Assembly (NCBI RefSeq): GCF_037042905.1
Contig: NC_087261.1
Span: 24,490,001-24,554,000 of the forward strand
Direction: 5' to 3'
DNA length: 64,000 nt
Origin: Lytechinus pictus
Taxonomy: Eukaryota
The notes under the pieces were generated by a model. That model was not told the origin of the DNA. It searched no databases and saw only the letters and a list, made by a program, of their open reading frames with translations. Numbering within the stretch: position 1 is the first letter of the stretch; each line of letters starts with the position of its first letter. Both the position numbers and the translations under genes were made by a program. Below, in pieces: positions 3,165-33,520 of the stretch.

Positions 3165-4092
3165 TCATGATATTACGTATTTATCATACATTGCATTGGA
3201 GTACGAATTCTTTTTAAAGTCCTGAATTTTCTTTCTTTTAGGAGCCACTTTGGGCTTCATTCCATTGTGTTTTGGTTGTACTTTCCTGTGACCAACGACG
3301 TATGTATCAGCTGCACCTCGTCCACCCTCATTGACGCGTTCATTCGCCGTTTCGTCCACCCGTTCGTTGTTGCCTTCTGAGGTCATTACCTCATAGAGAG
3401 TTTCAATGGTTTGGACTTGTCGACCAGTCTTTTCGTCTGATGAATGATTATTTATAAGATTGACATACGTGTGTTTCTTCAGATCTAACTCATTGTCATT
3501 CGTTACGGCGCCCGGCGGCATTCGAGGTTCGTTCCCTTTTGAGGTTTTAGTCGCGCTTGCGCCCATCGGGAGGTATGTATGGTAGGTGTTTGCGTCCCTC
3601 GCCTTTCGATTATTTTCGATTTTGGTCATATAAAGTGGTTTATTGGCCAAAACATTCAGATCGACGTCAGGCTCGGCTACGGAAGCCTCCTCGAGGTTGG
3701 CGTAGTCATTCACCGATTCGCTGATCGACGTGGCGTAGTCATGTTCAATCTGGCAGTACCCGACGGTGTCGTGTCGCGTCGGGTTCTCAGTGGCAACGGT
3801 GTAGTGATGGTGAGATAAGCCGGGTGATGGTGGGTTACCCGTCGGCATGGCTTGGCCGACTGCGTCGTAATCATCCTCGTCACCGTTGTCGAGCTCGAGG
3901 TAACCAGAATCCGATCCATTAGGAACATCGGCCAGACTACCGCTAGAGACCTGTACCATTAGGATGCCGAGTGACGGTGAGTCTGGGGGTCTACCACGGG
4001 TATGAGCAGGGGAACGGATATCTTCTGTGTCTGGTGTGGTATACAGATGAGAAAGAACTTCGCGCCCTGACTCCATAGGTTTCTTTCTGCGT
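3165..4092 (-). CDS. Gene A exon 7: entire cytoplasmic tail with tyrosine motifs
   Basis: Acceptor TTTTTCAG gives an RRRKK stop-transfer sequence; 308 aa, apparently disordered, with YLEL, YDAV, YCQI, YANL, YLPM, YVNL, YEVM. Confidence 0.9.
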
Positions 4093-7000
4093 CTGAAAAA
4101 AAAATCAACCATAAAATTGAAGAACGAATAAATCAAAACAAATTTCTTGTTCGATTGACGGATTATAAAATAAGTCACCAAAATAAAACAAACATAAAAT
4201 GGAAAAGTCAAAATAAGCTGCCCATTGCAATGGCAGTCCGTGGAGTTTGTCATTGAACATTATTCCCTGGCTGGGCAGCTAGTTTCGCCAATATTCGTCA
4301 GCCAAGGTTCTTAAAATAGATGTCGGTACCATCGAGATGTTTGCCAGAAACCCCCATCAAATACCCCAGTCAGCTCATGGATGTCTGCGAAAGGTACTAG
4401 GGAGCTTTTGCTTCCAAGACGCACGACGTATTCACAAACATAGAAAATGTATTGTCAAACGCTCTTCATGACAATGAACAACCAAGAAGTCTTTGTCGAA
4501 AATTGGTGAATCAACACAGCAGTTTAATAATAATAATAATAATCCGCATTTATATAGCGCTTAACACATCGGAACGACGTCTCTAAGCGCTTTACAGATA
4601 TATTATTACCCCGGTCATCGGATCCTTGCATGCCCGCATACAATGTATGCACCTTCTCCACTCCCTGGGGAGCATTCCAACAAGAGTTCCAAGACTCAAT
4701 TGCTAGGCATACTACATAGGCTTTCGCATCCTACCGGGTACCCATTTAACACCTGGGTGGAGAGTGGCAAATTGTGGATTGACGCCTTGCCAAAGGACGC
4801 TAGGCCATGGTGGGATTCGAACACACGACTCTCTGATTACAAGGCGAGAGTCAGAACCGCTACACCACGGCGTTTCGTCCTGGACTCTTGACAAACGACA
4901 TATGTGCAATTTTTTGTCAGCTCCGAAACTGCTGTTCCGGTTCACCAATTTTCGACAAAGACCTCCAAGCTGTTCATTGTAATTAATCGGGTATTTTCAA
5001 TATATTTGCTGTGTTTTTTGATATTAAAGTTGAGGGTAATGGCATCTATTTTGTCCAATCTTAACCCACCCCTCAGTCAGACATGTGCGCAAATGTTTAT
5101 AACAAATATATCAGTGGATCGGCGTTATTAAAACCAAGAAGATATTGGGGCAACTAGCAAATTTGAAACACAAAACTTTGATACCCACTTCTGATCGGCC
5201 AAATATCAAGAGTATTTTTTTCTTCGGCATCAAACGCGTTCAAAAGTAAAGATTCGATCACTGGTCCAGAACGCATATATTGTACATTATTAGAATTTCT
5301 GTCGCTGAAACAAAATGACAATTCAGATTTTGTTCACTTTGTCCATTCTCGGTGTTTTCTTTTAAACTTACTTAATAGTACGAATAGGGGGGGGGGGTCC
5401 TACAAAGTTGAATTTCAATCTGAATATGTATATCACTCAGAATTTGTTCTATCACCAGCAGTAGCATAATTAGTCACAATTTTGAGGGAGCCAATAGTGG
5501 CATAGGGGGCAAACATTTCTAATAAGCTGCGAGCGCGCAAAAGTGTTGGCCTGGGGTCCGTTGCAGAAAGAGTTGCGTTTAAACGCAAGTCAAAATATCA
5601 ATCGCAAGTCCCAAATGCGCGCTGTTGATTGGTTAAAAATCAAGTTGCGCATGATTTTTGAAGTTGCGTTTGATTGCAACTTTTTCTGCAACGGGCCCCT
5701 GGTCTTGTTAATACATACATTCAAATATTGCAATGTGTTTTTTACATAAAATTTAGAAAATGAAAGCATATTTCATTATTGTCCTTTTCTTTATTTTTTA
5801 ACATGAAATTTAGACAATGAAAGCATATTTCATTCTTTTCCTTTCCTTTATTTTTTTTCTTGACATTGAAAATTTTGAGGTTCCATGCCCCAGCCTCCCC
5901 CCCCCCCCACCCACTCCTTCATCTGCACGCCAGTAATCACCAGACTGATAACATACCTCCGAACACAGTAACAGGAAATGGTCAGCGTTGAAACCAGGAT
6001 AAGCAAGACTGCGACACCGATACCAGAGAGCATCGGGATCATGAATCCATCTGAGATGAATCAAAATTNNNNNNNNNNNNNNNNNNNNNNNNNNNNNNNN
6101 NNNNNNNNNNNNNNNNNNNNNNNNNNNNNNNNNNNNNNNNNNNNNNNNNNNNNNNNNNNNNNNNNNNNNNNNNNNNNNNNNNNNNNNNNNNNNNNNNNNN
6201 NNNNNNNNNNAGGGTAACCACTTAAGTTCCGAAAAATGTTCTCCCAGCGGGCCCTGCTATTATTATTGGGCCAAGCTAGGCTTCCTATTCAGGTGCACAC
6301 AACTTTTTGAGGAATTACTTCCTGCCAGTACCCATTTACCTCACCTGGGTCGAGCGCAGCACACTGTGGATGAATTCATCATAGATGACATTGGCAAAAG
6401 TAAAATATAACTTGCATACTAGAAGGCATAGGATGTTGATTCGTCTGTTGTTTTCGATAGATATTTGACTCAGGCATCATGTGGGTGGGGTGGGGGGCTA
6501 AAGAGAACTTTAAATTTGTGATACCACCTCATAGGTACGCTCGAGAGTTGATGGACGTTTTCCTCCTCTACCTTGGTTATATTGCGGAGGTGTTTACTGA
6601 CATAATCAATACTCCAATTTCTGGTTTCGGCCGATTCTTTCTTCAAGTATCTCTTTATGTCTCTTAATTTTTTAAGGGTAGACCTAATAATGGCATAGGC
6701 CTATAAACAGTTAATTAACATCATCGTGTGAGGCGTGGGGATTATGGGCCTACATAATATAATTTCTTCACGATCTTTTTGTAGAACAGGTTGTTTCTAT
6801 AGGGGCGATTCCATGCTAGAAAAATCAGCCATTTTCACAACATTTTTCAACCTGCTGTCCAAACAAACGAAGAACTTTAATTTGCTTTGTGGTGATATTA
6901 AAGTACTACTGGGTAGACATGCAAGAAACTGACAACGAACAAAAATATGTTGTCCGTATAGGTGAATTAGAGCTTAAAATGTTGCGTGTCGTACGGGACA

Positions 7001-10000
7001 TTTCTGCGTCCCTTACGACACACAACATTTTCACCTATAATTTACCCATAATCATTTGTTTGTGTTGGTTATTAGTTTTTCACATGACTACCCACTATAG
7101 CTTTAGTATTGAAAAAAAAAGAGAATATTTCATTGCTCAAGCATTCGGCTATAGGAAACTAAAAGTTGTCAAATATCCCGTACGACACGTATGGAATCGC
7201 CCAAACATTAAAGCTTCTCTTTTGTAAAACGATACATGTAATGAATTTGCAATAAAACTGTTTGCATACAGGTTTAATTCAGAGTAGATGAATATACAAA
7301 GGGACTTTACTTGAATCATTGTTATCCGTAGATGATCCGTCTGTGTCGGGAAAACTCTCAGAAGATTCTAACTTCGGAATAGGGGTGACTATGTTCTCTG
7401 AAAAGACAAATGAAAAAAAATAGTAATGTATACAGGAGAAAGAAAAAAAAATCGCACACGTGTGTTACGCTATTCATAGAACAATTAGGCCTACACAGCA
7501 TAGCTCAGCATTAAAACGGCTTTTTTTAACATAATAATTAAAGCTATTTATTCACTGTTCCTTTTTCATTACATCGGAATGGGCATTTCTAGCAGTTCTG
7601 ACAGGTATATAGGCCTGTATTTTTGGCCAGTGTGTTCAGAATGATTAGTTTCATTGGTTTTAATGATTTTTTAAATGCCCAAATGGGACATTTGTTTCTG
7701 TGTTTCTGACAGAATAACCAAGTGATCGCGAAACTCACCTCTTTCAATGGCACTAACTCGAAACCAAAAGCCTTGGTACTCCACGCTGTAATCGGATTCG
7801 AACCGAATCGTAACCGATTCGTTCACCGGATATTCGACAGAAAACCCTCGCGGAGCCAAACTCCCGGTTAAAACTAGGACATCGTCTTTCGCTGAGGTAG
7901 TGCCGATTTCAACAATGTCGTGCTTGGATTCAAGATGAGAGGAGATGACGTCGACGCGAATCGATTTGTTGATTGGTGGATTCAGATACCACGTGATGTT
8001 TTGATGCTCTGGATAAGGGGAGGGGTAATTTTCCGACGCGATGTTGATTGGGGAGGTGATATTAATTTGTTGTTCTCCGAGTTCTACCTGAAATTCTGAA
8101 AAAAGGAGAAGAAAAGATAAAGAGGGCAATTGATTGTTAGTAATTTTGTTTTTCACAAGAACAATGAGATCAACTATTTGAAATTATTAGTAATGACATC
8201 TCTTCTCGAAAAACGGGACCAGCTTCTAACGTGAATGCCTCGTTATTATATTGACTATTCGCTCTACATTATGCCCATTTTTCGGCTTATGGTTTCTGTA
8301 AAGAAAAATGTATAAATTGTAAAAACACCAATTATAATAAAAGTAATTTTTTAACACATACCTTCAAATTGGTCCGGTCCTGCAATTATATCGATCAGAA
8401 AACCGCGGAATGCTTTTGAATTATCGGTCTGAAACCTCAACCAAATTTTGTTATAACCGGGTACGATTAGGTCCGTCGGCAAATCGGTTTTGTTGTAATG
8501 ACTCGTGATAAATGCCAAATGGTTTCTTCGGTCACTGTAATCCGATCCTACTCCAATGGTGATCTTATCGTATCGGTTTTCAATATTTATATCCTTGAAC
8601 CGGAAAGTAACCGATTGCTGGGAGGGCGCTGAAATTCTCCAGATGATATCGGCGTAATTCGGATAGTCGTGAGGATATCCGGGCGATGAAATTTCGGCAG
8701 TTTGGGTGTCCGAAAGGACGACATCTCTCTCATGATGAATAGCTGAAACAGAATCAGGAAAATTACGACTTTCAGGGTTTTATACTTCCGGCATTTTTTA
8801 TTTCTTATGTTCTTCTTCATTAATATCAAACCATTTACTGTGAAACAAGCCTATAAATGTCCGTTTAAATGAAATAAGTTAGAGCATTTTGATTATGAAA
8901 TGAACAAATTTGCAGATATTCATGTTAGGATCTCCTGAATTAATAGATAGAAGGGACTAACGTGCTCGACTTTATTTTAACGATTATGAGCAGTTTTACA
9001 AGTATAAGGAGCAATGGCGGTAATTTGGATGAAATAGGTAAGGAACTCAACGGGGACTTCACGAGGACGTGCATTGGGGACAGAAAAGTCCGTATGCTTT
9101 TATGGGTGAAGAAAAGGGTTATCGTTGGCAAGAACTAACGTCATTAGACTCCGAAGAATACATAACAAGCAAATTTATAAATACTTTGAGATGCAATGCC
9201 AGGTGTAAATTTCATAAGGTCAGAATTTATACATAATTTATATATTTTTGAAGAGGTGTTGTGGCTCAGTTGATAAGTCTCCGGAGTCCGGACCTTTCAA
9301 GATCCGGGGTTCAAATCCAACCTCACATTTTGCCACTCTCCACCCAGGTGTAGTAAATGGGTACCAGGTAGGAAGGAATTCCTTGAATGCTCGAGCGTCC
9401 GATCAGGATAGCCGTGCTCAGGGGCGGAAATCTCTCCCAAAAGGTAGGGGGGACACAGGGGCGGATCCAGCCTTCGCCAATAGGGGGGGGGGGCGGAAAT
9501 TTGTTTCAGCCATATTTTCTCCGATCGGCAGCTCGAAGATGATTTGTGTTTGTTTCTTTGAAGGGGTAGTCCTCATTAGTCACTTCTTAGCTTTATTCTT
9601 ATAAATTCATAAATAATATCATAATCCTTATTATATGATGCGACCGCGAAGCACGAGCTATTTTTTTGGAAATGTTATGTATTTTTACCCAAAATTTGAA
9701 CATTCTGGGCAATGTTTGTTATCCTGAAAAAATGAGTATGCAACTTAATAATTACTACGAACGCAAAGCGCGAGCAGAAATGAACTGATGAAAAAGATAC
9801 CTGTTAAAGACTGCGTGCAGTTAGCATTTAACAATCAAATAATGCGAGCGCGAGCTGAATTTTTTTTAACATTTTCACCTAAAGAATGGAAATTCTAAGC
9901 ACTTTTTGTAACTCAAGCAGAATAGGTATATAAGTAGACAATTGATGCGAGCGCGAAGCGCGAGCGGAATATTTCGAGATTTAGTCCTATAATATTTACT

Positions 10001-24759: not shown

Positions 24760-26926
24760 CTATCTTGGACACACATCGTCAACACTGATGTACTCATGGA
24801 TATCGTCATCTTCATCGCTGCTGTCGCCACTGATTGCACTGTAAATCCCTTCCCCGTTAGTCAGATCGTCTCCACTTCCCTCCAGACCTATTGATGAATA
24901 TACCCCTGACGTTGTTGAAAGACGATTCTTTGAAGATAGTTTATCCAACGTGGCGCCCCCTGTAGGTTGGCTAGGACCAACATCGACTTTTCCAATGGAA
25001 CTTGCTGTCTCCTGGCTGTTTCTGGTGCCTGATGATTTTGAAAGATGATGCAGCTTATGTAGTTTCTTGTCACCAGAACGTTTGTTTCCCGCAGTATGTT
25101 CTAATCCCATCTGAGTGGGGACGTCCTGGAATTCGTCCAAAATGTCAATGTATAGATTGCCTAGGTTTGTTTCAGTCGTTGCATCTGCGCCGTTTTCCAT
25201 GTCCAGTTCATCGTAATCATTTTCGTCGGTTTGGGGTCTCTGGATAGTGGCACTTGCCATTTTATCGGAGCGCCTCGCGGGAGAAACAAGCTGGAAACTC
25301 CCAACAGTCGTAAGCTCCCTCCCGAGGACCACGTCAACGGTAGGACGTATCTGGACACTCTTCCTATTCATTTCGTACTGTGTACTAGGTAGAGGAGGCG
25401 AGGTGATTTCATCTGCAGGAGTCCATCCGGATGTTAGGTTTTCCAAGGACGCAGGCCGACTAAGAGGTTGGTATGTCTGTTCGGTACTGTCTATCTCATT
25501 GTATTCACCATCATCTTTCATATCCCCATTAACAAGATGGGAACTTCTGGATTCCTTTTCCATAACTGGCCTTACTTGCGTTTGGTTCTTCCTAAGCGTT
25601 TCATACTGCGATTGTTGTGGCGCCTGTGTATTTTCTTTTTTAGGATTAGAAGTTTGTGGTGAATCCACCATAGATGCAGGTCTACTGAGTGGTTGGTAAA
25701 TGGATTTTTCTTCTGTTTCATCTTCCTCAATAAAAGCATCTGAGACAAACGAACGAAGTCCATCTCTATATCCAGGTGATGTTTTCGTCAAGGATTCTGA
25801 GCTTTTACGAAGGTTATTCCACAACTGGACGCCGACTGCATTCAGGTTAGGATTACTTTTGGCGAGGCGCTTGTCCAGTACTTCTATATTCCGCGAAGCC
25901 TGGGGAGTGGCCAATAAACTTGTGGATCTCAATGCAGTGTAATGCCCCGACAGCTTGCGAGGTTGATCACTCGTATTTGCCCGACGACGCTGCTCTGGTA
26001 GTGAATGCACAATGTCAACAATCTCCCAACCTTCACCGTCAGAAAGTATTAATGAGCCTACAGGAGATATGACTCCAGGAGACTGACTTTCCAGAACAAA
26101 ATATTCCTGCTGTGTTAAGTCTGCAGAAGAAATAGTCCCAGGGGGCCCTCTTTCCAAAACATAATACCCAGGCTGTTCATTGTTATTCAGGATATTTGGG
26201 GCCACGTGTGCTTTTGACGCAGTAGACCTTAGAGGCTGGTACGTAGGGCCAATACCAGGATTTGATTGGCCACAGTTAGCGTTTCTGATATCGGTTTCCA
26301 TAAATATAGGTATCGAGCCCACACTTCTAGCTCCTTTTAGCTTCATGTTCATTGGATTTACACCGAATTTACCTATTGCATACTTCCGAACCGGCATCTG
26401 AGGTCTTGAGACAGTGTTTGGCTTTTGTGCAGGTGTGACAAAAGCATGGCGAACGCGTGGGATGTCAGCCGTGTTTGCTCTGGAGCGTTGCCCAGCACTC
26501 GCATGATGGGAACCACTCCCATCGAGACTACCCGCACCGAGTGACCTCTGCGACTTAGAAACTGGGTGTAGCATGTTATCAATCATGTTCGTAAGTTCAC
26601 AGAACTCGACATCAAGTTCGGCGCTCAAGGTCCTCTTGCTTCCGTCACAACTGGCGGTAGACCCGCTCCTCTTGCTGTTCCCGCGTGGGTTCTTGGATAT
26701 TTCCTGGTACACATGCGGTCCGGGGGTACCAAACAACAGATTGTACTCGCCTTCTCCTATCTCGTAATAGTGGTTCTTTAGACCCGGTTCCATTGGTCCT
26801 GTTTGTGCAAGAGCAGGTGATACTTGATGTGTGGTCAGGTTCATGTCTCGTTTCTCGTGATTCATAGGATTGTTGCACATCCCCAAAGGCGGTCGGGTGT
26901 CGGAGGTCGAGGCGTTCGCCGTAGAT
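24760..26926 (-). CDS. Gene B exon 5: entire cytoplasmic tail
   Basis: 2167-nt exon inside the 726-aa ORF; acceptor CCATGCAG at 26927; 16 Yxx[LIV] motifs. Confidence 0.92.
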
Positions 26927-29900
26927 CTGCATGGATACAATTGTCAAATTTGATTATGAAAACATTTTAGAAATGTAAAAATATGAATGATATAAAAGTT
27001 ATAAAAATGCATCCTATTTTCAACTCAATGTTTATACCACACGATTGTTTTAAAGTTTGCAACGTCTAGAAAGAGTAACCTTTTTTTATCATTTTCACTG
27101 TTGTTAAGAGGTAAAAGGTCGCGGGAAAGGAGGAAAACGGTCTCCGAAAGGGATTTTGTTCTTCTTCCTCATCTTCTTCATTTGTCCTGTTTCATGTTGT
27201 TGTTCTTTGTTAGAAAATGTCTTATTTGTCCGCTAGCATCTTTTACACCGGAAGTATTGGTGCACTACAACAAATTTTGTTGGTTTCAGTGAGAGCTGAA
27301 TGAGGATGTTTGCGTATACTGTTACAGAAACACTTTCTAGCAATGACTTAGGGACTACGAGGAAAGGCTAGATAAGGTATGTGTTCTATGTTAGCTGAGT
27401 CCCGAAGTCAAATCCGTTTCCGTTATTCATAAATACAATTCTGTTAAACCATATAGCTATGCGATTTAAGTAAAAAGGGCATTATTTACCTCTTCTTTTT
27501 GTGATAGGCGCACACCACCGCCACTCCTAGGCCAAACGCGACCAGAGTCAGCCCAACTGCTAATGGGATTGAAACTCCAAGGCGTCTCCGGGTAGCTGAT
27601 GAAGACAAGAAACAAGAAAAGGGTGACATCATTTAGGATAACACGTCAGTAAATAGTGATAGACGATAGCTTTATATTACGTATTGGTTATTTGATGAGG
27701 ACAAAATGTTAACAGGATGAAAGATGGCAATGGTTATCATGGTAGTGATTCCGTTGCTGATGCTGCTGATGATGACGATTATGGTGATTCTTTTCTGATG
27801 TAATACTGGAATGAATTATGCAAGGTATCGTAAAAAAGTGCCATTGTGGTGATAAAAATTTTACAATAGAACAGGGTGCGTCGTGCAATGTAAATCTGAA
27901 TACACGACAAAGAGCACGGTTCCCTTACATGGAAGATACCCTTGTGGTACCTCGGTCATCTAATTGTATCTACAGTGATTGGTAAAGGTGTTGAGCGGCC
28001 AATCAAAAGCATTGCATGAACGTTACCATCGGATGGTCAAGTTACTATAAAAGAAACTTTGATACAACGGGACCCAAGGGGTGGTCTAGTGGTAGGCTAT
28101 AAATTTGAATATTGTAAGGGACCGATAACTCTTTAAAATGCACGTATGATTGAGTGGATACAGCTATGCCAGGAAAGTGGTTCCATATCCGATAGTCTTT
28201 GGGAAGAAGGAGTTCTGCTGACTTTGGTCATCATGGCAGAGCAGAGCATGGTCATTCCTTGCAAGACATGCTGCTAGGTCACTGCATGTGGGAAAGGCAT
28301 CATGACCAGTCCAAAATGGGATGCTGGTGATCGGAGAACATTGGTAGATGGGTAGCCGATGGTGCAATAAGTTCCATGCATGTGCAGATAAAAGAAGTGA
28401 AGTTATAGACCACCTGTAGTCATGATGATAGTGGTAATAATGATTATGAATTGCTGAAGCTGGTTAAAATGGTGATGAACATGATGTAATTTACATGCAT
28501 AATTCCAACTAGGAAGTGTTTCATGAAAAGTCATGTCAGTGATTTTCCCCGGCAAAGTAAATTGCTCTTAGCCAATCAGATCCAAGGATTTGCAGTAGAT
28601 TTTACTGTGGAAATCACTGACCAAACTTTTCATGAAACACTCACAGAAATAATAACGTGCACTTGCAGCCTGCTGTCACTTGTTTAAAAAACATTCCTCA
28701 TTATAAGAGGAACCGGGTCGTGTGGTCCAGTGGTTAGAGCATTGGACTTATAATCGCAAGGTTGTGAGTTCGAATCCCAACTCTGCCATTGTCTCCACTT
28801 TGATAAAAAGGCCAGAGAGTGATATCTGTCGTCTATAACGTCAGCCACTATGACTGATTAACCTAGACGTAAAATGTTTCCTAGGTAATTGGTTATATAC
28901 CAGCTTGGCGTTTACCAGCAAAAATGCTGTCCTGCCGAGTTCCTACGGGAGTTACCATAAACAGAAACAAACAGAAATAAACAGAAACAGGAAGTATAAG
29001 GGATGATATACAGACATGATAGAGAGCGACGAAAGGGGGCGCATCATTAATTGCATTCGAAACAAAGGTATATGGATACTCACTTGGTTCAAGAGACACT
29101 AACGGAAGATCCATAAAGTCTGTAGCCACAGGTGACTTAAAGTCCATTATTGGAGTAATGTCTGGTAAGTCGGTGGGATCTGAAGGTTAAAGAATAATTT
29201 GTTTGCCATTCATTGAAAATGTTGGCATTGTAAACATACGGTGTAAATAAATGTAAGACTACAAAGACAAGGGGGAAAGGCCAGTGTGACCTGCCACTCC
29301 AAAACCAGCAAGAAGTGGCCCAAAGTGAGTTTTAATTTTTTAAGATACCTTGACAGTGATGTGGCTGCAAGCGCGGAATATTGTATCGTTCTGCATCATC
29401 ACACTTGGAAATGATGTTTGCTTCTCTGCACTCCCCACAATCTTCTAAATTCAATTCCTCCTTCCCAAATAACAACTGAAGAGTCCCGAAACAAATACAA
29501 AATCCCTAAAGCGAAATTTTACAGATGTGCAGTTATTAATCATACGATTTTAGTGTCATTTTTTCTATAATGGCTCATTACCTGATGGGATGCGTATGAC
29601 TTCCTTGGCAGACCTTCCGACCACATTACGAATAACCTACCCCTATATATTAACATGTGTAAAACCACATTGGAAGATCTCCGAGTTACGTAGGTCCACG
29701 AAAAAATGAAACAAAGGTACGAATTTAAATTTTGTACGGTCTGGGCATTATCAAATAATGGGGTCCCCAGACATGTAAGAGGGAGAGGGACACACTCCCG
29801 CGCGTACTTTTCATGGAAGGGGAAAGAGAATAGAAAAGGAACCAGCGTTATAAAAAATTAAAAGGTACAACATTCAGTTGTCACGGTTTCTAGAATGTTT

Positions 29901-32243
29901 TATTTGGGGAAGGGTGACAATTCATTCTTGCCTCGGGCAGAATTTTTCAGAGCTTCTACACCCAGACTTCACCATGTCTACAGCAATACTCACCTGGATC
30001 GACAGCAACTGTCAGCCATATTCCCCTGTCGGTGACATTGTCGATGTCCGAAGAAAATGTCACCCACACCAACTCGTTCGTGGCGAACGAAAACGTGCTA
30101 TTGACCACACGCTCGAGATCGTCATCTGCCTCGTACATTTGGGTCTTGGCCTTGTGTTGTCCGAATCTGAAGGTGTCCCCTGTTGCCAGCTCTAGGTCGT
30201 TGACGGTTAGCGACAGACCGCATCCAGAGGGCGCTTGAAATGTCCAAAGGAGGTTGACGTCTTGGGGGTAGTTTGATGGATAACCTGGAGTTGTGATGTC
30301 GATTGGGGTTGTGTTCTTGTCGAGGACATAGGTGCAGTAGGGTACTGGTATTTTGGAAAACGAAACAATAACGTTGTGAAACTATTAAATATTAAGAAAA
30401 ATCCAAATGAATGATATCGTTTTTTGTTTTTATTTCTACTGCGTGTGTATATCTACATAGGCTAGTATTTTCTGAAAGAAGGAGCGATGCCAGGGCATTA
30501 TATAAAGGGAGCAGGAAGGCACACTCAAATGTATTAAGATAAATAGGTCTCGTACGGTAAGAAAACCAAGTCTTACCTTCGCCATATACCTACTATGTGG
30601 AATTTACCTTAATTTATTATTTCACCCCCTTTCTTTTTCATCCTTCCAATTACACATCTCCTCCTCTGTTTAGGCCGACAGCTCTGGGGAATAATTATTA
30701 GACCATATTATATACCGTATGGTAGCTTAGTAAGAAAGTGGTCTAATGACAAAATTATTTCCCAAACTGTGGCCCGTATTCTGAAGACCAGTTTATCTTG
30801 TGGCTCTGTCACATTGTTCCGTGCAAGCTTGTGTGTGACGTGACTTGCAGGTAACTAATTTACTACCCGCAGGTCGACCGCATTGACGGTATCTCGCACG
30901 CATCTCACACGCAGTTGCCTGCAGAAGCGCATTGCACGCAGAAAAGTTTTGAACATGCTCAAAACTTTGTTGTGGGCGAGTTGCAGGCAATCACTCGCAA
31001 CCCACCCGCAAGGCTTGTACGGAACGATGTGACAGGGCCTTTAGACAGGTCTATAACTCTGTGCTAAAATTATGGGAAGCCGAAAATGTAAAAAAACAAA
31101 TCTGTTCATAATTTATGTGTTTGAACTTTACTGTTTTCGTTTCCCCATCCATTAATGATGAAGAAAACTGTTTTTCATTCGCTCATTATTCCGAGAAAGT
31201 TATGAAAGATGTGTGCACAAAATGAGCAGATAATTAGACCTTTATTGTTAGAGGCTTGTGTCACAACTGGGTAGCCATAGTTGAACAACTTTAGACCAGA
31301 GTTTGAATTAAACTGGAACACAGACACTGCAAAAACACCGGTGTTAATTCAACACCATCCTGGTATCTGTATCGGTCCACACCAGAGAGGTGTTGAAACA
31401 ACAGTCGTTGGCGTTAGGCTAACACAAATTTGGCATTTAACTTAAGCAATTTAAGCAACACCAGTTAGTGTTAAACCAATGTCGGTTTGATTCTTAACTG
31501 GTGTTGTTTCAACACCTCACTGGTGTGGACCGATATAGATACCAGGTTGGTGTTGAATAAACACTACATAATAACTTCCACTATTTGTCACAATTTGTGG
31601 ACGCTTGTGAATAACAGGCACGAGACATCTAAAAAAATTATTTTTGGGATAGGATCATTCAATGGTACGTTATCGCAATGACCGCTCCGTTTGTAAACAA
31701 AAGGTGGACAGGAATAGATCACTTCCTTTGCCTCACGTACATCCGACCCGAATTGTTGACCGAAATGGAATGCTTAGGCTTTACCAATTCAAACATCTTT
31801 ATTCTTCCATTTTCATACAATTTCTTATACAACGGATATATATTATTATCAATAAATGCTTTATTCCTACTTTGTCCGTTCGTGCAACATTTCCATTAAC
31901 CCATTATTGGGATCATCATTAACATTACCATCGTAATCATCAGTAGTAGTAGTGGTGGTAGTAGAAGTAGTAGTAGTAGTAGAATGCCTAGTAGTAGGTA
32001 GTATAGTAATAGTAGTAGAAGAATAAATTGTTGTGGTGGTGGTGGTAACATTAGTGATGGTGTTTGNNNNNNNNNNNNNNNNNNNNNNNNNNNNNNNNNN
32101 NNNNNNNNNNNNNNNNNNNNNNNNNNNNNNNNNNNNNNNNNNNNNNNNNNNNNNNNNNNNNNNNNNNNNNNNNNNNNNNNNNNNNNNNNNNNNNNNNNNN
32201 NNNNNNNNNNNNNNNNNNNNNNNNGCAGCAGCAGCAGTAGTAA

Positions 32244-32300
<57 letters not shown>

Positions 32301-33520
32301 AAATAGTATAAGCAGCTGCCATGATAGGTGGTGGTGGTAGTAGCAGCAGAATCAGCAGCAGCAACTTTTACAAAAGTGTGTCGACATTGTCACTGCATAA
32401 TTATTAAACATCAATTTACATTGACTTTCCTTGAATATCTTATTACACACCAAATCTTACATGGAACTAGTTACCCTTCCTTCTTAGAAGGGCTCCGTTT
32501 GCGGGGACACGCTCGCTCGCTTTGTTCACTCTTGTAGATTTTAAAGAATAGTGCTCCATACCCAGTTGACTGTACTCAACAAACACACTGTCGGTCCATG
32601 TGCTCTTTCACACCAGTACCAATTAATAACATTAAATTTATGTGATTCGTTAGATGTGTACACGGAAATCCCATTGAATATAAAGGATTGCATTGCACAG
32701 CCCCATTGCAGATTTTGCGAGGAATAAAACCAAAGAGAAGTTTCTGATTATTCATGAACTATTCATGGAATTTAAGATAAAAGAAAGGGAGAGTTAAGCG
32801 TGATTGGCTCATTGAATTGTCAAATAATCTCGATGACTATTTTACAAAAAACAAAAGAAAATTCAAAACGTCGTAAAACGTTCTTTATTATAATTTTGAA
32901 AACCCTTTCGAAAAAAATATATAGAGTTAATTTTCCAAGACCTTATACTAGTTTGTCATAGTTTTTGTTATAGACCAATGGTTAAATGAGAAAAACATAT
33001 TTACTAGAAAAGTAGGCATGAGTTTTCATTAATCTTGAAAAAGGAAAACCTAATCATGTTTCACTTTACAAGATAACTTTGTGAAGGGTATGAATGCCAT
33101 AATGGATGCTGCATATAACACATGAAATTTCAATAGCATCATGGTAATTTCTTTAAATCATGTAAGCATAACTTACATGACTCATGTTTAGTTGCATAAA
33201 AGGTTTAGAAAATCACAGAATGCTCTCTCTCTCTCTATATATATATATACATATAAGAAAAACAAACGTATTCAATTAAAAACAAAATCCTGATCACTGA
33301 AGTAAGTCAGTGCTTGAAATAAGGCCAGGTCAAACATCACTGTGTTGTTTTATGTAAATATGATCATACCTATATATTTTTACACTATAACAAAATATAA
33401 TATATACTTACGGCAGTCTTTATCTGATGATGTCGCAGGCGGGAAAATACACAGTCCATATGTTATTAAAATCACGAGGCTTCCTGGATTATGAAGGAGA
33501 GTCATGTTGTCGTGCAGCAT
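24760..33520 (-). CDS. Gene B: type I membrane protein, signal peptide + 1 CUB + stalk + TM + 721-aa ITAM/ITIM-like tail (942 aa)
   Basis: Exons (minus): 33520-33412, 30344-29994, 29179-29084, 27595-27490, 26926-24760. All GT-AG, phases 1,1,1,2; total 2829 nt, open to the TAG at 24760. Confidence 0.88.
27490..27595 (-). CDS. Gene B exon 4: transmembrane helix (absent from the ORF track)
   Basis: TRRRLGVSIPLAVGLTLVAFGLGVAVVCAYHKKK; phase 1-2, acceptor TTCATCAG, donor GTAAAT. Confidence 0.88.
28160..28390 (-). pseudogene. LINE ORF2 C-terminal fragment
   Basis: NSFFPKTI followed by a frameshifted WNHFP, the SFFPRTIxxWNxLP motif typical of CR1/L2-group ORF2 ends. Confidence 0.5.
28715..28990 (+). 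mobile_element. tRNA-derived SINE (second family); diverged minus-strand copy at about 59655-59833
   Basis: A-box TGGTCCAGTGG, B-box GTTCGAATCC, (AAACAG)n tail. Confidence 0.88.
29084..29179 (-). CDS. Gene B exon 3: Pro/Thr/Asp stalk
   Basis: DPTDLPDITPIMDFKSPVATDFMDLPLVSLEP; 96 nt, phase 1-1, acceptor CCTTCAG, donor GTGAGT. Confidence 0.8.
29994..30344 (-). CDS. Gene B exon 2: CUB domain
   Basis: CTYVL..IDITTPGYPSNYPQDVNLLWTFQAPSGCGLSLTVNDLEL..GDTFRFG..LVWVTFSSDIDNVTDRGIWLTV; donor GTGAGT. Confidence 0.9.
30801..31040. mobile_element. MITE nested in an older element (about 30770-31320)
   Basis: TIR ggctctgtcacattgttccgtgcaagc / gcttgtacggaacgatgtgacagggcc. Confidence 0.78.
31326..31565. 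mobile_element. Palindromic MITE with CACT end; similar-ended elements at 34248-34412 and 55624-55842
   Basis: Long inverted arms ggtatctgtatcggtccacaccag / ctggtgtggaccgatatagatacc. Confidence 0.72.
31940..32345. repeat. (TAG)n microsatellite spanning an assembly gap
   Basis: Direct inspection; Ns at 32067-32224. Confidence 0.9.
33412..33520 (-). CDS. Gene B exon 1: signal peptide
   Basis: MLHDNMTLLHNPGSLVILITYGLCIFPPATSSDKDC, then strong donor C|GTAAGT (phase 1); alternative ATG at 33505. Confidence 0.7.

What the first reader, a model, noticed from the sequence alone, without database searches (positions are those of the whole stretch)
25462..26770. Two canonical ITAM patterns in the gene B tail
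Seen: EGE-YNLL-FGTPGPHV-YQEI (8-aa spacer, 26698-26754, preceded by YYEI) and DGE-YNEI-DSTEQT-YQPL (6-aa spacer, 25462-25512). Both fit [DE]xxYxx[LI]x6-8Yxx[LI], including the acidic residue at -3. Known: such motifs dock tandem-SH2 kinases (Syk/ZAP70; Shark for Draper). Inference: activating or phagocytic signalling from a CUB receptor.
Basis: partly seen in the sequence, partly recalled or inferred. Interest (0 to 1): 0.78.

Follow-up and report, generated by a model that had tools for sequence, protein, structure and literature searches.

The report
ITAM-like tyrosine pairs, urchin CUB receptor
The two ITAM-format tyrosine pairs are really there, in the long disordered cytoplasmic tail of an uncharacterised sea-urchin-only CUB-domain membrane protein; one pair looks like a genuine, recurrent two-tyrosine docking unit, the other has a spacer that changes between urchin lineages, and no binding has been shown.

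Summary
The window is Lytechinus pictus DNA. The finding lies in the last exon (24760-26926, minus strand) of LOC129279872. This protein has a signal peptide, one CUB domain, a stalk, a transmembrane helix and a roughly 725-aa tail, and spliced contigs show it is transcribed.

The tail holds 15 Yxx[LI] among 21 tyrosines (2.5 expected). Given that density, two ITAM-spaced pairs are not rare (P=0.23; P=0.03 with the acidic -3).

Orthologues were found only in L. variegatus, S. purpuratus and one related transcript set. All four ITAM tyrosines are invariant. Tyrosine is the best conserved residue type, and the conserved footprint runs from -1 to +3, as for SH2 ligands.
- **Motif 2 (YNEI-x6-YQPL):** keeps its spacer. 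It belongs to an acidic-Yxx[LI]-x6/7-YQPL module present three times in S. purpuratus (P=1.5e-4). Lytechinus lost the first tyrosine in two of the three.
- **Motif 1 (YNLL-x8-YQEI):** is x11 in the strongylocentrotid sequences.

The same genome encodes Syk/ZAP-70-type tandem SH2 domains and SHP-2.

Verdict: a phosphotyrosine scaffold receptor with one credible ITAM-type unit. Syk docking is plausible but untested, and an activating or phagocytic role is unsupported. This stretch was also noted in another read of this scan (s1-329232).

The parts
26698..26754 (-). ITAM-format pair 1: EGE-YNLL-FGTPGPHV-YQEI (Y66 and Y78 of the exon ORF; Y282/Y294 of P0017). The spacer is 8 aa here and 11 aa in the strongylocentrotid orthologues.
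26758..26769 (-). YYEI just upstream of pair 1. Together they form a membrane-proximal three-site tyrosine cluster (YYEI / YNLL / YQEI). The orthologues read YYCEI, so the register shifts by one residue.
25462..25512 (-). ITAM-format pair 2: DGE-YNEI-DSTEQT-YQPL (Y480, Y490; Y696/Y706 of P0017). The 6-aa spacer is kept in all orthologues. It is the only complete copy in Lytechinus of the acidic-Yxx[LI]-x6/7-YQPL module.
25687..25698 (-). YQPL of internal repeat 1 (Y415, IYQPLSRPAS). S. purpuratus has DDDDD-YSEI-x6-YQPL here. Lytechinus lacks the upstream tyrosine because of a gap of about 10 aa.
26230..26274 (-). YQPL of the first module (Y234, 26230-26241) together with Cys223 (26272-26274). 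The Cys aligns with the Tyr of S. purpuratus DDN-YSQL-x7-YQPL, so this is a half-module in Lytechinus.
24760..26926 (-). Terminal coding exon. It encodes the whole cytoplasmic tail of about 722 aa plus the stop codon (24760-24762): 21 Tyr, of which 15 are Yxx[LI]. The model predicts it unstructured apart from one helix (P0017 562-602).
27490..27595 (-). Transmembrane exon (RRRLGVSIPLAVGLTLVAFGLGVAVVCAYHKKKR), with canonical splice sites.
29084..29179 (-). Extracellular stalk exon.
29994..30344 (-). Single CUB-domain exon. It is skipped in L. variegatus isoform X2.
33412..33520 (-). First coding exon: start codon and signal peptide (MLHDNMTLLHNPGSLVILITYGLCIFPPATSSDKDC).
24790..24900 (-). C-terminal acidic triad VYSSI / IYSAI / EYISV (Y681, Y700, Y717). 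All are invariant and 17-19 aa apart. They are context for the tail's overall Yxx[LIV] grammar and are the subject of a sister finding.

Best explanation
The finding is part of the cytoplasmic tail of LOC129279872. This is an uncharacterised type I membrane protein found only in sea urchins, with one extracellular CUB domain and a disordered tail of about 725 aa.

The tail most likely works as a non-catalytic, tyrosine-phosphorylated docking scaffold. Inferred steps: ligand-driven clustering of the CUB ectodomain lets Src-family kinases phosphorylate about 16 conserved tyrosines, almost all of them in Yxx[L/I/V] sites, and these then recruit SH2 proteins.

Within this scaffold the distal pair (acidic run-YNEI-x6-YQPL) is a real two-tyrosine unit of ITAM type. 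It is the surviving Lytechinus copy of a module that occurs three times in S. purpuratus, and it is the best candidate for bivalent docking of the urchin Syk-family tandem SH2.

The proximal pair (YNLL-x8-YQEI, with YYEI) is more likely a cluster of separate Src-SH2-type sites whose ITAM-like spacing is lineage-specific.

Shown here: the gene model, transcription, topology, the CUB domain, conservation of the tyrosines, recurrence of the module, and presence of Syk-type and SHP-2 genes. Inferred: phosphorylation, which SH2 proteins bind, and any cellular output.
For: **Gene model and transcription**
- tblastn of P0017 places five exons with GT-AG borders.
- Spliced contigs from two studies join 26926|27490, 27595|29084 and 29179|29994.

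**CUB domain and topology**
- CUB is supported.
- The model gives a beta-sandwich at 39-152, a TM helix at 195-220 and almost no secondary structure in the tail.

**Scaffold**
- 15 of 21 Tyr are Yxx[LI] against 2.5 expected.
- The tail has no NPxY, YxN, YxxM or YxxP.
- Tyr is the most conserved residue type between L. pictus and S. purpuratus: 16/21 against about 51% for other residues, Fisher P=0.016.
- Around the shared tyrosines, identity is 15/16 at -1, 13/16 at +1, 13/16 at +2 and 14/16 at +3. It is only 6/16 at -3 and 7/16 at +4. That is an SH2-ligand footprint.

**Distal module**
- S. purpuratus has DDN-YSQL-x7-YQPL, DDD-YSEI-x6-YQPL and DDE-YNEI-x6-YQPL. Under a block shuffle, all three YQPL having such a partner has P=1.5e-4, and three strict ITAM patterns has P=0.006.
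- Repeats 1 and 2 are clear internal duplicates that include both tyrosines (z=28).

**Readers exist in the same genome**
- Syk/ZAP-70-type N-SH2 (E=1.8e-37) and C-SH2 (E=3e-15) lie on one strand at C11:2041225-2046730.
- The pTyr-pocket arginines can be read in both exons.

**Literature**
- Syk and HTK16 transcripts are reported in a sea-star egg transcriptome (PMC11593052).
- ITAM is defined as two YxxL 6-12 aa apart, and acidic residues upstream of YxxL promote phosphorylation in hemITAMs (PMC3576117).
Against: - No phosphorylation or binding data exist, and no paper in the searched library mentions the gene.
- Only two independent lineages are available, Lytechinus and strongylocentrotids. 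Two profile searches and a full HMMER scan of 1.8 billion representatives found nothing else. Conservation is therefore shallow.
- The x6 spacer would be kept by chance about 85% of the time, given 0.03 gap openings per residue.
- Two of the three S. purpuratus modules are duplicates, so the P=1.5e-4 overstates independent evidence.
- Lytechinus tolerates loss of the first tyrosine in two modules. This argues that bivalency is dispensable at those sites.
- In L. pictus alone the pattern count is compatible with motif density (P=0.23).
- The structural model is low-confidence throughout (mean pLDDT 30, five-sequence alignment). Disorder is suggested, not proven.
- Two raw RNA-seq runs showed no reads on the exons. 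Expression is therefore restricted or low, and the tissue is unknown.
Confidence: 0.5

Rival explanations
1. One reading: both pairs are functional ITAMs. After dual phosphorylation they dock a tandem-SH2 kinase (Syk-type or Shark/HTK16-type), which makes the CUB protein an activating or phagocytic receptor.
For: - Both strings fit the canonical consensus.
- All four Tyr, their +3 residues and the acidic -3 are conserved.
- Under the wider published definition of 6-12 aa (PMC3576117), the strongylocentrotid x11 version of pair 1 still qualifies.
- A Syk/ZAP-70-type tandem SH2 is encoded in the same genome.
- MEGF10, Jedi-1 and Draper show that long multi-tyrosine tails can carry working ITAMs read by Syk or Shark (PMC8092387).
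Against: - The pair 1 spacer changes by 3 aa between lineages.
- Pair 1 sits in a three-tyrosine cluster whose first site also shifts register (YYEI versus YYCEI).
- The number of pairs in L. pictus is what motif density predicts (P=0.23).
- There is no evidence for expression in phagocytes. The tail also carries ITIM-format sites (SIYQPL, SQYETL) and a C-terminal YSSI/YSAI/YISV triad, and SHP-2 is present. The net sign of signalling is therefore open.
Confidence: 0.2
2. Neither pair acts as a bivalent unit. Every Yxx[L/I/V] is an independent single-SH2 docking site (for Src-family, Csk, SHP-2, PLC-gamma and similar proteins). ITAM-like spacing is a by-product of many sites packed into a tail that grew by internal duplication.
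For: - The block-shuffle null gives two or more ITAM-spaced pairs in 23-24% of trials for L. pictus.
- YQPL is invariant in all three modules, while its upstream partner is missing in two Lytechinus modules.
- Repeats 1 and 2 are duplicates, so recurrence is partly inherited.
- Site-by-site conservation from -1 to +3 is what single SH2 ligands need.
Against: - In S. purpuratus all three YQPL sites have an acidic Yxx[LI] exactly 6-7 residues upstream (P=1.5e-4; strict pattern P=0.006). This includes the first module, which resembles the other two only at motif level (z=6-8).
- The resulting Tyr-to-Tyr distance of 10-11 residues is the one that tandem SH2 domains of Syk-family kinases use (established knowledge of ITAM recognition, not tested here).
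Confidence: 0.25
3. The motifs are not phosphotyrosine signals at all. They are YxxPhi endocytic or lysosomal sorting signals, or simply conserved residues of a tail with another role.
For: Yxx[LIV] also fits the AP-2 mu2 sorting consensus (established knowledge). No phosphorylation data exist.
Against: - Fifteen to sixteen such sites spread over 700 aa, many far from the membrane and preceded by acidic runs, are far more than sorting needs.
- Conservation of the -1, +1 and +2 positions goes beyond the Y and Phi positions used in sorting.
- The acidic upstream context is typical of tyrosine-kinase substrates (PMC3576117).
Confidence: 0.05

Closest known systems
Canonical ITAM receptors and adaptors (FcR gamma, CD3, DAP12, CD79) read by Syk/ZAP-70
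   Same: The sequence format [DE]xxYxx[LI]-x6-8-Yxx[LI] is the same, as are the cytoplasmic location and the acidic residues before the first tyrosine. A Syk/ZAP-70-type tandem SH2 is encoded in the same genome.
   Different: - There is no sequence homology.
- The motifs sit in a 725-aa tail among about 16 conserved tyrosines, not in a short dedicated tail.
- One spacer varies (8 versus 11).
- The second half is a fixed YQPL[S/M]R[P/T]x[S/T] element that also occurs alone.
- Binding is untested.
Draper / MEGF10 / Jedi-1 engulfment receptors
   Same: These are single-pass receptors with long multi-tyrosine tails. An ITAM among other phosphosites is written by Src-family kinases and read by Shark or Syk, and a Corkscrew/SHP-2 ITIM arm exists in one isoform (PMC8092387). 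This is the best functional analogy, including for the x11-type spacing of pair 1 in strongylocentrotids. That Draper's own ITAM spacing is about 11 is from memory and was not checked.
   Different: - The ectodomain is a single CUB, not EMI plus EGF/NIM repeats.
- The tail has no NPxY.
- There is no sequence similarity.
- No evidence exists for a phagocytic role.
CDCP1 (CUB domain-containing protein 1 / Trask)
   Same: It is a type I protein with a CUB-type ectodomain and no catalytic domain, and its tail tyrosines serve as Src-family kinase substrates and docking sites (established knowledge). Weak, sub-threshold Pfam matches to CDCP1_CUB_6 were seen (12.8 and 15.7 bits against a cut-off of 27).
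   Different: - The match is below threshold, so membership is not supported.
- CDCP1 has several CUB-like domains and a short tail with few tyrosines and no ITAM format.
- The tails are unrelated.
hemITAM C-type lectin receptors (CLEC-2, Dectin-1)
   Same: S. purpuratus DDDN-YSQL has acidic residues at -2, -3 and -4, exactly as defined there.
   Different: - In L. pictus the acidic residues are at -1, -3 and -4 (DDGE-Y), and the exact hemITAM-format site is a Cys.
- The protein is type I with a CUB domain, not a type II lectin.
- The YxxI is followed by a second tyrosine at ITAM distance.

Membership tests
Canonical ITAM | Sequence pattern [DE]xxYxx[LI]-x6-8-Yxx[LI] | tested here: met
   Both strings match at 26698-26754 and 25462-25512.
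Canonical ITAM | Located in the cytoplasmic part of a membrane receptor or adaptor | tested here: met
   The order is signal peptide, CUB, stalk, TM helix followed by HKKKR, then the tail.
Canonical ITAM | Both tyrosines and their +3 Leu/Ile conserved in orthologues | tested here: met
   Y282, Y294, Y696 and Y706 of P0017 are invariant in five sequences. The +3 position stays L/I. Only two lineages are available.
Canonical ITAM | Spacer length held within 6-8 residues across orthologues | tested here: not met
   Pair 1 is x8 in Lytechinus and x11 in S. purpuratus and the Logan sequences. Pair 2 is x6 in all. The feature is therefore met for pair 2 only, and pair 1 fits only the wider 6-12 definition (PMC3576117).
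Canonical ITAM | A Syk/ZAP-70/Shark-type tandem-SH2 kinase exists in the organism | tested here: met
   Two SH2 exons on one strand at C11:2041225-2046730 have Syk and ZAP-70 as best PDB matches (E=1.8e-37 and 3e-15; the next family scores about 1e-13). A tyrosine-kinase glycine-loop exon lies about 19 kb downstream on the same strand, but it is too short to assign.
Canonical ITAM | Dual phosphorylation by Src-family kinases and bivalent binding of the tandem SH2 | not testable with these tools
   This needs phosphopeptide binding or cell assays. The complex predictor cannot model phosphotyrosine, and no contiguous Syk tandem-SH2 reference was available, so no job was sent.
hemITAM | Three acidic residues at -2, -3 and -4 before a single YxxL | tested here: not met
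   L. pictus has DDGE-YNEI, with acidic residues at -1, -3 and -4, and no [DE]{3}-x0-1-Yxx[LI] match. S. purpuratus has three such matches, including DDDN-YSQL.
CUB domain proteins | Sequence match to the CUB family | tested here: met
   Pfam PF00431 scores 21.4 bits (equal to the cut-off) in L. pictus and 22.6 bits in S. purpuratus. A profile of three sequences hits only CUB structures, with MASP-3 at E=1.4e-10, MASP-1 at 2.2e-10 and cubilin at 4.2e-10. The model shows a beta-sandwich at 39-152 at low confidence.
Draper/MEGF10/CED-1 family | EMI/EGF-repeat ectodomain and an NPxY motif in the tail | tested here: not met
   Pfam finds only CUB. There is no NPxY in either the L. pictus or the S. 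purpuratus tail.
CDCP1 | Match to CDCP1-type CUB domains above threshold | tested here: not met
   PF23665 scores 12.8 and 15.7 bits against a cut-off of 27.

The most novel reading that the evidence does not exclude
The composite module (acidic run - Yxx[L/I] - x6/7 - YQPL[S/M]R[P/T]x[S/T]) is a lineage-specific ITAM variant that couples a CUB-domain surface receptor to the sea-urchin Syk-family kinase. That would give the first defined Syk-coupled, non-catalytic activating receptor in an echinoderm. The module number would be evolutionarily tunable: three in Strongylocentrotus and one in Lytechinus. An alternative isoform without the CUB domain (seen in L. variegatus) would act as a transmembrane adaptor. 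More speculatively, the protein could be the unknown membrane scaffold upstream of Src-family kinase and PLC-gamma signalling in echinoderm eggs.
Probability: 0.25. Interest if true: 0.65.

Novelty: new variant of a known kind. Interest (0 to 1): 0.38.

Why it matters
Sea urchins have Syk-family kinases and SHP-2, but no paper in the searched library describes an ITAM-bearing receptor that feeds them. This gene offers a concrete, testable candidate.

It has a defined pair of tyrosines (Y480/Y490 of the exon ORF). It also comes with a natural experiment, because sister modules lost their first tyrosine in Lytechinus but kept it in Strongylocentrotus.

If Syk docking were shown, it would extend ITAM-type signalling to a CUB ectodomain in a non-chordate deuterostome. 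It would also show how such motifs multiply and decay by internal duplication.

If not, the gene remains an ordinary lineage-restricted phosphotyrosine scaffold. It would then illustrate that ITAM-format strings arise easily in tails dense with YxxL sites.

Tried and rejected
1. **Ig and discoidin exons as part of gene B.** I first supposed that the minus-strand Ig-like and discoidin-looking exons at 39971-48854 belonged to gene B. This is rejected. The annotated protein and tblastn place the signal-peptide exon at 33412-33520, and the ectodomain is a single CUB.
2. **Gene A and gene B tails as paralogues.** Rejected: BLASTP finds nothing (best E=0.095). Only the CUB exons are related, at 28-29% identity. 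The gene B tail is single-copy in the genome.
3. **Deeper orthologues.** A full phmmer scan of 1.84 billion representatives gave 2 hits. A word-indexed search gave 4 clusters. A tail-profile search found the same 4. A search restricted to the CUB-TM region found 3. The ESM Atlas feature search gave a best score of 0.76, which is noise. No outgroup was found, so gain versus loss of the first module's tyrosine cannot be polarised.
4. **Pfam on the tail.** No family matched.
5. **Kinase exon downstream of the Syk-type SH2 exons.** A glycine-loop exon was found, but it is too short to tell Syk from other tyrosine kinases.
6. **Grb2 site.** YEMN/YEIN has Asn at +3, not +2, so it is not a pYxN site.
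7. **Expression.** Two raw RNA-seq runs gave no reads on the exons, only on an intronic repeat. Sample identities are coded, so no tissue could be assigned.
8. **Whole-protein structure model.** It is low-confidence (mean pLDDT 30), so no fold search was run on it.
9. **Complex prediction.** It was not used. It cannot represent phosphotyrosine, the urchin Syk tandem SH2 is split over exons with no unaltered contiguous reference, and neither outcome would have moved the odds much.
10. **Literature.** No paper mentions LOC129279872, LOC121430891, LOC105439665 or their accessions.
Full report
**What is there**

The region lies on the minus strand inside a 726-codon open frame (24760-26940).

**Whose gene it is**

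A full HMMER scan of 1.84 billion representative proteins with the exon found two proteins only. A word-indexed search found four clusters:
- L. pictus LOC129279872 isoform X1 (P0017, 942 aa), whose tail is 100% identical to the window
- L. variegatus LOC121430891 isoform X2 (P0001, 93% identical)
- S. purpuratus LOC105439665 (P0018, 963 aa, about 54% identity over the tail)
- a set of transcript-like Logan contigs close to the S. purpuratus protein (P0002/P0011)

All are named 'uncharacterized', and no paper in the library mentions them. The window is L. pictus contig C17:24490001-24554000.

**Gene model**

tblastn of P0017 places five coding exons with canonical splice sites:

| Exon | Window coordinates (minus strand) |
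|---|---|
| signal peptide | 33412-33520 |
| CUB | 29994-30344 |
| stalk | 29084-29179 |
| transmembrane | 27490-27595 |
| tail | 24760-26926 |

Contigs of two public studies of the same species skip exactly these introns (joints 26926|27490, 27595|29084, 29179|29994, each with GT..AG on the minus strand). The CUB-containing mRNA therefore exists. Two deep raw RNA-seq runs showed no reads on the exons, so expression is not ubiquitous. Sample identities are coded, and no tissue can be named.

The L. variegatus X2 protein lacks the CUB exon.

The Ig-like and discoidin-like exons further upstream (39971-48854) belong to another gene.

**Domains and topology**

Pfam finds one CUB domain just at threshold in two orthologues (21.4 and 22.6 bits). 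A profile of the two orthologues plus the neighbouring gene A exon hits only CUB structures in the PDB: MASP-3 at 1.4e-10, MASP-1 at 2.2e-10, cubilin at 4.2e-10, then C1s, PCPE-1 and neuropilins.

The AlphaFold model is low-confidence throughout (mean pLDDT 30). It shows a signal helix, a beta-sandwich at 39-152, a TM helix at 195-220, and a tail without secondary structure except one helix at 562-602. The basic HKKKR after the helix puts the tail in the cytoplasm.

'CUB receptor' and 'cytoplasmic tail' are thus supported.

**Is the pattern more than chance?**

The tail has 21 tyrosines, 15 of them in Yxx[LI]. Residue shuffles give 2.5 on average and never 15 in 20000 trials. It has no NPxY, YxN, YxxM or YxxP.

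Because the tail is so dense in such sites, I used a null that keeps each tyrosine heptad intact and shuffles positions. Under it, two or more ITAM-spaced pairs arise in 23-24% of trials, and two or more pairs that also have the acidic -3 in about 3%.

In L. pictus alone, then, the ITAM spacing is only weakly unusual. The strong signal is the tail-wide Yxx[L/I/V] grammar.

**Conservation**

In the five-sequence alignment all four ITAM tyrosines are invariant (Y282, Y294, Y696, Y706 of P0017).

Between L. pictus and S. purpuratus, tyrosine is the best conserved residue type: 16 of 21, against about 51% for the rest (Fisher P=0.016). Around the 16 shared tyrosines, identity by position is:

| Position | -3 | -1 | +1 | +2 | +3 | +4 |
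|---|---|---|---|---|---|---|
| Identical | 6/16 | 15/16 | 13/16 | 13/16 | 14/16 | 7/16 |

This is the footprint expected of SH2 ligands.

Pair 1 has an 8-aa spacer in both Lytechinus species but 11 aa in all strongylocentrotid sequences (FGTPGP---HV against FDASGPKTAHV). The upstream YYEI becomes YYCEI. It still fits the broader 6-12 definition used in the literature (PMC3576117).

Pair 2 keeps x6 everywhere. With about 0.03 gap openings per aligned residue, though, a 6-residue stretch would stay indel-free about 85% of the time, so this alone says little.

**The recurrent module**

The most informative result came from the S. purpuratus orthologue. Each of its three invariant YQPL sites is preceded, 6-7 residues upstream, by an acidic run and a Yxx[LI]: DDN-YSQL-x7-YQPL, DDD-YSEI-x6-YQPL and DDE-YNEI-x6-YQPL. 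Under the block-shuffle null, three strict ITAM patterns have P=0.006, and all three YQPL having such a partner has P=1.5e-4.

The second and third copies are clear internal duplicates of a unit of about 75 aa that includes both tyrosines (z=28). The first resembles them only at motif level (z=6-8). The independent evidence is therefore smaller than the P value suggests.

In Lytechinus only the third copy is complete. The second lacks the first tyrosine through a gap of about 10 aa. Because its duplicate partner and its S. purpuratus counterpart both have that tyrosine, loss in Lytechinus is the parsimonious reading. In the first copy the aligned residue is a Cys.

Two things follow:
- A bidentate 'acidic-Yxx[LI]-x6/7-YQPL' unit has been maintained repeatedly.
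- YQPL also functions alone, and the unit is dispensable at some positions.

The acidic run before the first tyrosine recalls hemITAMs, where it is needed for phosphorylation (PMC3576117). S. purpuratus DDDN-YSQL fits that definition exactly. L. pictus DDGE-YNEI does not.

**Are the proposed readers present?**

A Pfam SH2 scan of the L. pictus assembly gave 50 exon hits. Several clusters can be assigned:
- **Syk/ZAP-70 type.** Two exons on one strand at C11:2041225-2046730 have Syk and ZAP-70 as best PDB matches (N-SH2 E=1.8e-37, with the next family, SHP-2, at about 1e-13; C-SH2 E=3e-15, Syk first). Both retain the phosphotyrosine-pocket arginines. A tyrosine-kinase glycine-loop exon lies about 19 kb downstream on the same strand but is too short to classify.
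- **SHP-2.** Another cluster (C14:28351930-28359624) is SHP-2 (E=6e-33).
- **PLC-gamma and RasGAP.** Exons that look like these were also seen, identified by eye only.

A sea-star egg transcriptome is reported to contain Syk and HTK16 transcripts (PMC11593052).

The tail also carries ITIM-format strings (SIYQPL, SQYETL) and an invariant C-terminal YSSI/YSAI/YISV triad.

**Interpretation**

I read the tail as a non-catalytic, tyrosine-phosphorylated docking scaffold attached to a CUB ectodomain.
- The distal pair (25462-25512) is a credible ITAM-type bivalent unit and the best candidate for Syk-type tandem-SH2 docking.
- The proximal pair (26698-26754) is more likely part of a cluster of separate Src-SH2-like sites (YYEI, YNLL, YQEI) whose ITAM spacing is lineage-specific.

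Phosphorylation, binding partners and the cellular output are all inferred. 'Activating or phagocytic' is not supported by anything found here.

The rivals are:
- both pairs are true ITAMs
- neither pair is bivalent
- the motifs are sorting signals rather than phosphosites

They are listed with their odds in the rival explanations.

**Comparison with known systems**

The closest functional analogues are Draper, MEGF10 and Jedi-1: a long multi-tyrosine tail with an ITAM read by Shark or Syk, plus an SHP-2/Corkscrew arm (PMC8092387). This protein has neither their EMI/EGF ectodomain nor an NPxY.

CDCP1 shares the logic of a CUB ectodomain with a Src-substrate tail. The Pfam match to its CUB type is far below threshold.

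There is no sequence relationship to any vertebrate ITAM chain.

The gene is therefore a new variant of a known kind, restricted as far as the databases show to camarodont sea urchins.

**Limits**

- Only two independent lineages were available.
- No outgroup was found.
- No tissue assignment was possible.
- No binding or phosphorylation test was possible.

The complex predictor was not used. It cannot model phosphotyrosine, and no contiguous, unaltered Syk tandem-SH2 sequence was available.

Noticed in passing
window 3168-4253 and 7752-8722 (minus): The neighbouring gene A on the same strand also has a CUB exon (7752-8057, 28-29% identical to gene B's CUB) and a weaker second hit at 8582-8722. 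Its Tyr-rich tail ORF of 362 aa shows no similarity to gene B's tail. This is a tandem pair of CUB receptors with unrelated tails.
   Followed up: partly
window 39971-44991 and 46399-48854 (minus): A series of Ig-like exons (Pfam V-set, ig and Ig_3 hits up to E=3e-8) and fragments that look like the start and end of a discoidin domain lie upstream of gene B's signal-peptide exon. They belong to a separate gene, not to gene B.
   Followed up: partly
window 28440-29030 (intron between stalk and TM exons): This stretch has read or word depth in the hundreds to thousands in all four runs, with many variant letters and loose ends. It contains a weak Rfam tRNA match at 28716-28788 on the plus strand (30.5 bits; ARAGORN finds no tRNA). 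It looks like a high-copy, transcribed tRNA-derived SINE.
   Followed up: partly
P0001 (L. variegatus isoform X2) versus window 29994-30344: The annotated L. variegatus isoform skips the CUB exon. That leaves an ectodomain of about 70 aa on the same TM and tail, a form like a transmembrane adaptor. Only the CUB-containing junctions were seen in the L. pictus contigs.
   Followed up: partly
window 25518 and 25521: One contig (run X1) carries T>C at both places. This gives K475E and M474V just upstream of pair 2, a more acidic lead-in. Glu is also the L. variegatus residue. No non-synonymous difference was seen inside either ITAM-format string.
   Followed up: no
window 26467-26484 and 25969-25986 (minus): Two conserved RxRxxT strings (RSRANT and RRRANT; RSRAHT and RPRAYT in S. 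purpuratus) are possible basophilic Ser/Thr-kinase sites in the same tail. There is also a conserved helix-forming block, LDKRLAKSNPNLNAVGVQLWNNLRKSSESL.
   Followed up: no
G000 C11:2020500-2047500 (L005, L008, L009); C14:28351000-28360500 (L002); C2:61711000-61720990 (L006); C5:19023000-19036000 (L003/L004): These are L. pictus loci for a Syk/ZAP-70-type tandem SH2 and for SHP-2, both confirmed against the PDB. Exons that look like PLC-gamma and RasGAP tandem SH2 domains were identified by eye only.
   Followed up: partly
window 20001-22000: This stretch has a strong GC skew (0.40) and a 300-aa minus-strand ORF (20391-21293) between genes A and B. It was not examined.
   Followed up: no
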